A stretch of DNA of 64,000 nucleotides. Origin: Auanema rhodensis (taxonomy: Eukaryota > Animalia > Nematoda). A program made the translations under genes and the position numbers. Of the stretch, positions 48,040-48,133 are shown piece by piece; position 1 is the first letter of the stretch; each line of letters begins with the position of its first letter. Where the stretch lies: contig OZ059900.1 in NCBI GenBank assembly GCA_964057225.1, positions 1 to 64,000 of the forward strand, written 5' to 3'. Under the pieces are notes generated by a model. That model was not told the origin of the DNA, searched no databases, and saw nothing but the letters and a program-made list of their open reading frames with translations.

Positions 48040-48056
<17 letters not shown>
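48040..48056 (+). repeat. Target-site duplication, left copy (GTGACGCGCATGAATGG; right copy 52384-52400)
   Basis: 17-bp direct repeat flanking the insert; occurs once in uninserted units. The last two G's merge with the element's G run, so the true length is about 15-17 bp. Confidence 0.95.
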
Positions 48057-48057
48057 G

Positions 48058-48133
48058 GGGGGGGAATGTTCAACCTCTACGGGGTCCCTTCTAGATAGCC
48101 GACTGGATCTCCGGTTGGTGAACTGATGAACAT
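48058..48133 (+). ncRNA. HDV-like self-cleaving ribozyme (predicted) at the element 5' end
   Basis: P1 G7 (within the G run 48055-64)/CCCTTCT 48086-92; P2 ATGTTCA 48066-72/TGAACAT 48127-33; P3 ACC 48073-75/GGT 48083-85; L3 TCTACGG; P1.1 CT 48077-78/AG 48093-94; P4 GCCGACTGG 48098-106/CCGGTTGGT 48111-119; J4/2 GAACTGA with candidate catalytic C48123. Confidence 0.85.

What the first reader, a model, noticed from the sequence alone, without database searches (positions are those of the whole stretch)
48055..48133. Compact HDV-like ribozyme whose P1 strand is the junction G run
Seen: all five helices of the nested double pseudoknot can be assigned in ~76 nt, with the hallmark G1-U wobble, L3 U..G pair, 2-bp P1.1 (C-G, U-A) and a C in J4/2 (CTGA). 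The 5' strand of P1 appears to come from the ten G's at 48055-48064, two of which also match the 28S target. Established: R2 and some other non-LTR elements use 5' HDV-like ribozymes to excise themselves from the rRNA co-transcript. Inference: the G run is functional rather than non-templated filler, and slippage of the pairing register could give variable 5' ends and variable G-run length among copies.
Basis: partly seen in the sequence, partly recalled or inferred. Interest (0 to 1): 0.8.

Follow-up and report, generated by a model that had tools for sequence, protein, structure and literature searches.

The report
HDV-like ribozyme of R4 retrotransposon
The first 76 bases of a jumping gene lodged in one of this nematode's 28S rRNA genes form a convincing HDV-type self-cutting RNA whose first helix is built from a run of G's; such ribozymes are already published for this element family, so it is a sound but largely expected find.

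Summary
Window 48058-48133 (with three further start registers back to 48055) is the only match in the window, on either strand, to an HDV-like double-pseudoknot descriptor. Nothing as strong appeared in 19 Mb of simulated sequence.

It lies at the 5' end of an intact 4.3-kb R4-type retrotransposon that carries a restriction-like endonuclease. The element sits in one 28S gene with a 17-bp target duplication.

Ten relatives from other nematodes and metagenomes, and two further R4 lineages in this genome, carry the same core at the same junction. P1, P2 and P1.1 covary fully. Three off-target copies of a sister lineage begin exactly at the predicted cut site.

The G run is the only possible partner for the P1 3' strand CCCUUCU, so at least seven of its G's are functional. 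Run length differs among the six copies (10, 10, 11, 11, 12, and one run of 11 interrupted by an A). Register slippage, polymerase slippage, added bases and assembly error cannot be told apart here.

No Rfam model matches, and no cleavage was tested. HDV-like ribozymes at R4 5' ends are published (Ruminski 2011, as cited in PMC3774820), so this is a new member of a known kind.

The scan noted the same reading on another piece of this genome (s1-391509).

Side finding: two R4 lineages whose proteins are 39% identical share this 5' module almost base for base.

The parts
48040..48056 (+). 5' copy of the 17-bp target-site duplication (28S sequence GTGACGCGCATGAATGG)
   Evidence: BLAST of the intact against the interrupted 28S: intact 2377-2393 is present on both sides of the insert; sequence read
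48057..52383 (+). R4-type non-LTR retrotransposon, 4327 bp, same orientation as the rRNA genes
   Evidence: Interrupts LSU rRNA 45664-53490; single ORF with RT and restriction-like endonuclease; nematode relatives
48055..48064 (+). Run of ten G's; the first two are shared with the 28S target; source of the P1 5' strand in four possible registers
   Evidence: the run is 10, 10, 11, 11, 12 or GGGAGGGGGGG in the six genomic copies
48058..48064 (+). P1 5' strand in the 3'-most register; the predicted cut is 5' of its first G
   Evidence: descriptor hit; P1 duplex about -9 kcal/mol, within the range of relatives
48066..48072 (+). P2 5' strand (AUGUUCA)
   Evidence: seven Watson-Crick pairs with 48127-48133; P2 covaries in relatives
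48073..48085 (+). P3 (ACC/GGU) enclosing L3 (UCUACGG). U48076, C48080 and G48081 are the conserved U, C and G; C48077 and U48078 form P1.1
   Evidence: matches U19, C23 and G24 of the published descriptor (PMC6326823)
48086..48092 (+). P1 3' strand (CCCUUCU)
   Evidence: invariant in all six copies
48093..48094 (+). 3' half of P1.1 (A, G)
   Evidence: pairs with U48078 and C48077; relatives show CU:AG, CC:GG and UC:GA
48098..48119 (+). P4 hairpin, nine pairs, loop AUCU
48120..48126 (+). J4/2 (GAACUGA) with the candidate catalytic C48123
   Evidence: sister copies and most relatives read CUAA here
48127..48133 (+). P2 3' strand (UGAACAU); 3' end of the ribozyme
48134..48215 (+). Conserved hairpin domain just after the ribozyme; function unknown
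   Evidence: 3 differences in 82 nt between lineages A and B although their ORFs are unalignable as DNA; fold
48421..52197 (+). ORF of 1258 aa: Myb-like N-terminal part, reverse transcriptase, CCHC motif, PD..E..K endonuclease
   Evidence: invariant C1047, C1050, H1059, C1064, P1130-D1131, E1146, K1162 in 26 relatives
52384..52400 (+). 3' copy of the 17-bp target-site duplication

Best explanation
Window 48055/48058-48133 encodes the HDV-like self-cleaving ribozyme of an R4-type retrotransposon.

RNA polymerase I reads through the interrupted 28S gene. The first ~76 nt of the element then fold into the nested double pseudoknot (P1, P1.1, P2, P3, P4). C48123 in J4/2 acts as the general acid, and the RNA cuts itself just 5' of the G that opens P1. 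This frees the element RNA, which starts with a 5'-OH G run, from the upstream 28S sequence. That RNA serves for translation and for target-primed reverse transcription.

The G run supplies the 5' strand of P1. It pairs with CCCUUCU through four G-C and three G-U pairs.

On reinsertion the C run at the end of the cDNA can anneal to the GG that ends the cleaved target (TGAATGG). That would explain why two of the G's look like 28S sequence.

Shown here: the fold, its statistical rarity, its conservation, covariation in relatives, and element 5' ends at the predicted G1 in a sister lineage. Inferred: the cleavage itself, the exact register, and the activity of this particular copy.
For: 1. The descriptor matches only this site in the window, on either strand. 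No equally strong match occurred in 19.2 Mb of simulated sequence.

2. The geometry equals a published HDV descriptor position for position: P1 1-7/29-35, P1.1 20-21/36-37, U19, C23, G24, and C then R-A in J4/2 (PMC6326823).

3. R4-like relatives (L008, L010-L014, L090 from Haemonchus, L093, L094) have the same P3/L3 core at the 28S junction, with different but complementary P1 and P2. Cognate strands pair at 98-100% against 71% and 39% for swapped strands. P1.1 switches CU:AG to CC:GG.

4. In this genome, lineage C has P1 GGGAACU/GGUUCCC and P1.1 UC:GA. Lineage D has P1 GGACAC/GUGUCU. Both sit at the same junction.

5. Three off-target lineage-C copies start with GGGAAC after unrelated flanks, which is exactly G1 of the predicted P1.

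6. All six A/B copies keep every helix. The only changes are at two L3 positions and one J4/2 position.

7. The ribozyme is 96% identical between two lineages whose proteins are 38.6% identical.

8. P1+P3+P4 is part of the minimum-energy nested fold, and the P1 energy is typical of relatives.

9. HDV-like ribozymes cutting at the 5' end of R4 and Dong are published (PMC3774820).
Against: - No Rfam family, HDV-type or other, matches even at E<=10. Covariance models cannot represent the pseudoknots.
- The fold-energy z-score is unremarkable, -1.1.
- My helix assignments in relatives come from a descriptor that demands pairing, so the cognate pairing figure is partly built in. The independent part is that the partners lie at fixed places: the junction, next to P3, and after the CUAA-type J4/2.
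- The window copy and its twin on C24 carry three changes absent from the other four copies: L3 positions 4 and 7, and CUAA to CUGA. Neither that G in J4/2 nor G at L3 position 7 is seen in any relative.
- The G run can also pair with the pyrimidine stretch CCUCUCC of P3/L3, a competing misfold.
- No cleavage data exist.
Confidence: 0.85

Rival explanations
1. The module is a true ribozyme in this element family, but the window copy and its identical twin on C24 are weakened or dead. They would have spread by rDNA array duplication, not by retrotransposition.
For: The window copy differs from the other four copies at three core positions: L3 C to A, L3 U to G, and J4/2 CUAA to CUGA. Its ORF differs from the C21 copy at only 3 of 3777 bases. 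No relative has G at that J4/2 position. The U-to-G change lets P3 extend into L3 in the predicted fold, which would sequester C48077 and G48081. The two copies with this core are 100% identical over the 364-nt 5' region compared.
Against: The changed positions are the ones allowed to vary in published descriptors: L3 positions 4 and 7, and R at J4/2 position 3 (PMC6326823). A at L3 position 4 occurs in L012, L090 and L093. The conserved U, C, G and the catalytic C are intact, and so is the ORF.
Confidence: 0.2
2. Only the seven G's next to J1/2 act as P1. The extra one to five G's, and their varying number, come from RT or DNA-polymerase slippage on a homopolymer, from non-templated addition at integration, or from homopolymer error in a long-read assembly. 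Sliding of the P1 register plays no part.
For: Seven G's fill P1. The C21 copy reads GG-GA-GGGGGGG. This fits a two-base filler in front of a seven-G RNA end. R2 junctions are known to gain non-templated bases when cleavage is at the element end (PMC3774820). Runs of 10-12 G are error-prone for sequencing and replication (general knowledge).
Against: All six copies have 10-12 purines in the run and none has the 7-9 G's that a fixed 3'-most register predicts. Lineage C junctions show a clean two-base overlap with the target GG and no added bases in 10 of 10 canonical copies. If that overlap holds here, the RNA itself would carry 10-12 G's. The C21 run also fits the register GGGAGGG with that same overlap.
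Confidence: 0.5
3. The fold is a chance resemblance and the G run is mere junction filler; the element is released from the co-transcript in some other way.
For: No Rfam hit. G runs pair with any pyrimidine run, so P1 alone is weak evidence. The energy z-score is ordinary.
Against: Descriptor rarity; the same architecture with compensatory changes in more than ten independent relatives at the same junction; strong conservation between divergent lineages.
Confidence: 0.02

Closest known systems
HDV-like ribozyme of R4 (Ascaris lumbricoides) and Dong (Bombyx mori), R4 clade (Ruminski et al. 2011 J Biol Chem; Eickbush et al. 2013, PMC3774820)
   Same: Ribozyme at the extreme 5' end of an R4-clade element bearing a restriction-like endonuclease, with cleavage predicted at the element's 5' end. 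The host is a nematode. The insertion is in the large-subunit rRNA gene between the R2 and R1 sites.
   Different: The P1 5' strand here is a pure G homopolymer, longer than P1 needs, so four to six pairing registers exist. The first two G's overlap the target. I could not read the published R4 structure: PMC3308841 and PMC307436 are not held. Identity with it is therefore untested.
R2 retrotransposon HDV-like ribozymes (Eickbush & Eickbush 2010; PMC3774820)
   Same: Same role, release from the 28S co-transcript. Same core layout, variable P4 and J1/2, and junction behaviour tied to the cleavage position.
   Different: Most R2 ribozymes take P1 from 28S sequence 9-36 nt upstream. Here at most two target bases take part. 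The clade and the insertion site also differ (26-43 bp downstream of the R2 site).
HDV genomic and antigenomic ribozymes and CPEB3 (descriptor in PMC6326823)
   Same: Nested double pseudoknot; G1-Y pair; L3 U..CG; 2-bp P1.1; C in J4/2 followed by N-R-A. The helix numbering is identical (P1 1-7/29-35, P1.1 20-21/36-37). CPEB3 also begins with a G-rich P1 (from memory).
   Different: One P1.1 pair is U-A instead of C-G. J4/2 position 2 is U, as in the antigenomic HDV ribozyme (from memory). P1 has three G-U pairs. No sequence-level match to the Rfam models.

Membership tests
HDV-like self-cleaving ribozyme | Strand order P1-P2-P3-L3-P3'-P1'-P1.1-P4-J4/2-P2', giving a nested double pseudoknot | tested here: met
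   Descriptor match at 48058-48133, the only one in the window
HDV-like self-cleaving ribozyme | G at +1 paired with a pyrimidine at the base of a 6-7 bp P1 | tested here: met
   G1-U48092 in every register. Relatives: 7 with G-U and 4 with G-C. Descriptor G1-Y35 (PMC6326823)
HDV-like self-cleaving ribozyme | L3 with conserved U (position 1), C (position 5) and G (position 6) | tested here: met
   U48076, C48080 and G48081 in all six copies. Most relatives keep them; L090 has U and L094 has A at position 5
HDV-like self-cleaving ribozyme | Two-base-pair P1.1 between L3 positions 2-3 and the two bases after P1' | tested here: met
   C48077-G48094 and U48078-A48093. Covaries as CU:AG, CC:GG and UC:GA. 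L093 and lineage D keep only one pair
HDV-like self-cleaving ribozyme | Catalytic C in J4/2, three to four bases before P2' | tested here: met
   C48123 in CUGA; CUAA in sister copies
HDV-like self-cleaving ribozyme | Compensatory base changes in helices among homologues | tested here: met
   P1 and P2 differ in every relative yet stay complementary. Caveat: the strands were found with a pairing descriptor, and a structure-true alignment for the count of structure pairs could not be made
HDV-like self-cleaving ribozyme | Match to an Rfam HDV-type covariance model | tested here: not met
   No HDV-type hit at E<=10 in 501-nt or 101-nt searches. These models ignore pseudoknots, and the family has little sequence conservation
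HDV-like self-cleaving ribozyme | Mg2+-dependent self-cleavage abolished by mutating the J4/2 C | not testable with these tools
   Needs a transcription/cleavage assay. Indirect support: off-target lineage-C copies begin at the predicted G1
R4 clade non-LTR retrotransposon | Single ORF with reverse transcriptase followed by CCHC and a PD-(D/E)xK restriction-like endonuclease; no AP endonuclease | tested here: met
   RVT_1 at 525-780; CCHC and PD..E..K invariant in 26 relatives; one ORF
R4 clade non-LTR retrotransposon | Site-specific insertion in the large-subunit rRNA gene midway between the R2 and R1 sites, in nematodes | tested here: met
   The insertion spans +26 to +43 relative to the R2 site TTAAGG|TAGCC. 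The R4 site description is recalled from Burke et al. 1995 (paper not held). Named relatives are from nematodes
R4 clade non-LTR retrotransposon | Closer in RT phylogeny to R4_AL/Dong than to the R2, NeSL, CRE or HERO clades | not tested
The best hits are unnamed or nematode proteins at 35-40% identity

The most novel reading that the evidence does not exclude
The all-G P1 strand works as a sliding helix. Any seven consecutive G's can pair with CCCUUCU, so cleavage occurs at several registers, possibly at the very start of the run, two bases into what reads as 28S. The run is then inherited, and it lengthens or shortens at each retrotransposition through its overlap with the target GG. In addition, this ribozyme-bearing 5' module is swapped between R4 lineages whose proteins are only 39% identical. 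The swap could occur by rDNA gene conversion spreading in from the shared 28S flank, or by template switching.
Probability: 0.3. Interest if true: 0.55.

Novelty: new member of a known kind. Interest (0 to 1): 0.4.

Why it matters
This is a well-supported, compact (76-nt) HDV-like ribozyme from a nematode R4 element. It comes with a ready comparative series: four R4 lineages in one genome and about ten relatives elsewhere, showing textbook covariation of P1, P2 and P1.1.

The homopolymeric P1 is a natural test of how an HDV-like ribozyme picks its cleavage site when the register is degenerate. It also tests how the cleavage site shapes 5' junctions, a question raised for R2 in PMC3774820.

The near-identical 5' module in two deeply diverged R4 lineages suggests that ribozyme and leader are exchangeable parts.

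None of this changes the established picture that rDNA-specific retrotransposons free themselves with HDV-like ribozymes.

Tried and rejected
- Rfam at gathering threshold, and at E<=10 on 501 nt and on 101 nt: no ribozyme family. The weak PK-SPCSV, SNORD12 and WT1-AS hits are chance.
- MAFFT alignment of eleven ribozymes put P1 and P2 out of register, because P1, J1/2 and P4 lengths vary. I therefore did not run the count of structure pairs.
- A covariance model built from the three local variants found relatives only at E 0.1-1.4, mixed with false hits, and misaligned their 3' halves. I abandoned it and tabulated pairs in a script instead.
- I searched for another P1 5' strand up to 330 nt upstream in 28S, as R2 has. 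There is none for this element.
- Three contig look-ups returned no DNA.
- L091, L092, L095 and L009 have atypical or truncated 5' ends that I could not parse with confidence.
- The primary papers on R4 and its ribozyme, and Webb et al. 2009, are not held.
- The decayed Ostertagia copy (L089) was not informative.

Full report
**Setting**

The window is a tandem array of seven eukaryotic rDNA units, all on the + strand. One 28S gene (45664-53490) is split. Comparison with an intact copy places a 4327-bp insert at 48057-52383, flanked by a 17-bp duplication of 28S sequence at 48040-48056 and 52384-52400.

The insert has one long ORF (48421-52197, 1258 aa). It carries a reverse transcriptase domain. 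After it come a CCHC motif and a PD..E..K restriction-like endonuclease, both invariant across 26 relatives. Named relatives come from nematodes: Haemonchus, Ostertagia, Meloidogyne and Caenorhabditis auriculariae, at 34-37% identity.

The insertion lies 26-43 bp downstream of the R2 site. That matches my recollection of the R4 site as midway between R2 and R1 (Burke et al. 1995; paper not held).

**The observation**

- With column = position minus 48057, P1 is 1-7/29-35 and P2 is 9-15/70-76.
- P3 is 16-18/26-28 and L3 is 19-25.
- P1.1 is 20-37 and 21-36.
- P4 is 41-49/54-62, and the J4/2 cytosine is at column 66 (C48123).

This is position for position the layout of a published HDV descriptor (G1-Y35, U19, C23, G24, P1.1 20-21/36-37, and a CRRA-type J4/2; PMC6326823).

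I wrote a descriptor search and ran it on both strands of the window. It hits only this site, in four registers starting at 48055-48058. In 19.2 Mb of first-order Markov sequence it gave 19 loose hits, and none with P1 of 7, P2 of at least 7 and P4 of at least 6.

P1, P3 and P4 are part of the minimum-energy nested fold. The energy z-score itself is unremarkable.

No Rfam family matches. This is a failed test of sequence-level membership. It is expected, because those models cannot encode the pseudoknots.

**Comparative evidence from other organisms**

Protein-guided retrieval gave R4-like contigs from metagenomes, sequencing-run assemblies and Haemonchus placei. Ten of them (L008, L010-L014, L090, L093, L094 and, truncated at its 5' end, L009) carry the core ACC-UYYNNGN-GGU (GCG/CGC in Haemonchus). 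In those that include the junction, it lies within about 15-20 nt of the 28S junction, or about 240 nt in L013, which has a large J1/2 insert.
- The P1 3' strand always follows P3 directly.
- Where the junction is present and parseable, the complement of that strand sits at the junction.
- The P2 strands flank P3 and a CUAA-, CCAA- or CGAAAU-type J4/2.
- P1 and P2 differ in every lineage yet stay complementary.
- Swapping strands between lineages lowers pairing from 98-100% to 71% for P1 and 39% for P2.
- P1.1 covaries (CU:AG against CC:GG).

The assignments come from a descriptor that requires pairing, so the cognate figures are partly built in. The independent evidence is that the partners are found at fixed positions.

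A structure-true alignment for the formal pair-counting tool could not be obtained.

**Comparative evidence from this genome**

The assembly holds exactly six copies of this ribozyme core, all at the same 28S junction. It also holds at least two further R4 lineages.
- Lineage C has 13 cores, with P1 GGGAACU/GGUUCCC, P1.1 UC:GA, and a P2 with one bulge.
- Lineage D has P1 GGACAC/GUGUCU and a ~40-nt J1/2.

Ten canonical lineage-C junctions all read GAATGG|GAAC. Three off-target copies begin GG|GAAC after unrelated flanks. So the RNA of that lineage starts at G1 of the predicted P1, and two of its G's overlap the target GG on canonical insertion. This is natural, indirect evidence that these ribozymes cut where predicted in vivo.

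**The G run**

The P1 3' strand CCCUUCU is invariant in all six copies. Its only possible partner within 330 nt is the G run. The duplex has four G-C and three G-U pairs. At about -9 kcal/mol it lies inside the range of relatives, -6 to -14.

Relatives also open P1 with two to five G's. This lineage is therefore the extreme of a family trend, not an oddity.

Run length differs between copies:
- 10 in the window and on C24;
- 11 on C19 and C20;
- 12 on C12;
- GGGAGGGGGGG on C21.

A fixed 3'-most register predicts 7-9 G's, depending on overlap with the target GG. All copies have 10-12.

If the clean two-base overlap of lineage C applies, the RNA itself carries the whole run. Cleavage would then lie at the start of the run, before G48055. 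The C21 copy fits that too, through the register GGGAGGG.

Three other causes would produce the same picture: slippage of RT or DNA polymerase on a homopolymer, non-templated addition, and homopolymer error in the assembly. The six copies may also represent only three or four independent insertions. I therefore treat register sliding as possible but not shown.

**State of the window copy**

The window copy and its C24 twin differ from the other four at L3 positions 4 and 7 and in J4/2 (CUGA instead of CUAA). Their ORF differs from the C21 copy at only 3 of 3777 bases.

These positions are allowed to vary in the published descriptor. However, G at that J4/2 position is seen in no relative. The L3 U-to-G change favours a four-pair extension of P3 in the predicted fold. 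A weakened ribozyme in this copy is possible; I put it at about 0.2.

**Side finding**

Lineage B (C12, C19, C20) encodes a 1289-aa protein only 38.6% identical to the window's, and it has an unrelated 3' UTR. Its 5' end is nonetheless very close to the window element:
- its first ~150 nt are 97-100% identical;
- the rest of the 5' UTR is about 82% identical;
- similarity stops at the ORF.

The ribozyme and the hairpin domain after it (48134-48215) therefore behave as a shared or exchanged module.

**Comparison with what is known**

PMC3774820 states that HDV-like ribozymes occur at the 5' ends of R4 (Ascaris; Ruminski et al. 2011) and Dong, and that they cleave at the element's 5' end. It also ties junction variability to the cleavage position.

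This finding is thus a new, well-supported member of a known kind. Its two modest twists are the homopolymeric P1 and the shared module.

Nothing here is human.

Noticed in passing
window 48057-48420 compared with L096 (G000:C20:37800-42700, minus strand): Two R4 lineages with 38.6% identical proteins and unrelated 3' UTRs share the 5' UTR. The first ~150 nt are 97-100% identical and the next ~230 nt about 82%; similarity ends at the ORF start. This suggests exchange of the ribozyme/leader module, by gene conversion from the common 28S flank or by template switching.
   Followed up: partly
G000:C8 about 11.0-12.6 Mb and 26.3 Mb; also C3, C4, C16, C20, C42: At least two more R4-type lineages, C (1272 aa, 45% identity) and D (35-36%), are present in many copies. 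Many lie in what looks like a second rDNA-derived region of contig C8. Some are tandem, with one element inserted into the duplicated target at the 3' end of another (L141, L152, L156).
   Followed up: partly
L144, L147, L153 (G000:C3:21572006, C8:12360653, C16:26804): Three lineage-C copies at non-canonical sites all begin GGGAAC after unrelated flanks. This marks the element RNA 5' end at G1 of the predicted ribozyme P1.
   Followed up: yes
window 48134-48215: An 82-nt stem-loop domain directly after the ribozyme is conserved between lineages A and B (3 differences). It produced the weak Rfam PK-SPCSV hit. Function unknown.
   Followed up: partly
window 48357-48410: An ATG conserved in both lineages opens the main ORF in lineage B. 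In the window element it gives only a 17-codon upstream ORF that ends at TAG, and the long ORF starts at 48421.
   Followed up: no
L010, L012, L013, L014, L093, L094, L095 compared with window, L008, L011, L091: R4-like relatives fall into two 5' junction classes. One reads CATGA|GGG... (13-bp target duplication). The other reads GAATGG|... (17-bp, with P1 starting on the target GG).
   Followed up: partly
L013:90-391: An R4-like ribozyme with a 234-nt insert in J1/2, between P1 at the junction and the rest of the core.
   Followed up: no
L143 (G000:C64:59000-63500, minus strand): A 5'-truncated lineage-A copy is joined to 28S at CATGAAT, directly to ORF sequence near residue 415. It has no ribozyme.
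   Followed up: no
window 1330-7177: The first rDNA unit of the window scores lower than the other six for 18S, 5.8S and 28S (for example 18S 1508 against 1544 bits). It appears to be a diverged unit at the edge of the array or contig.
   Followed up: no
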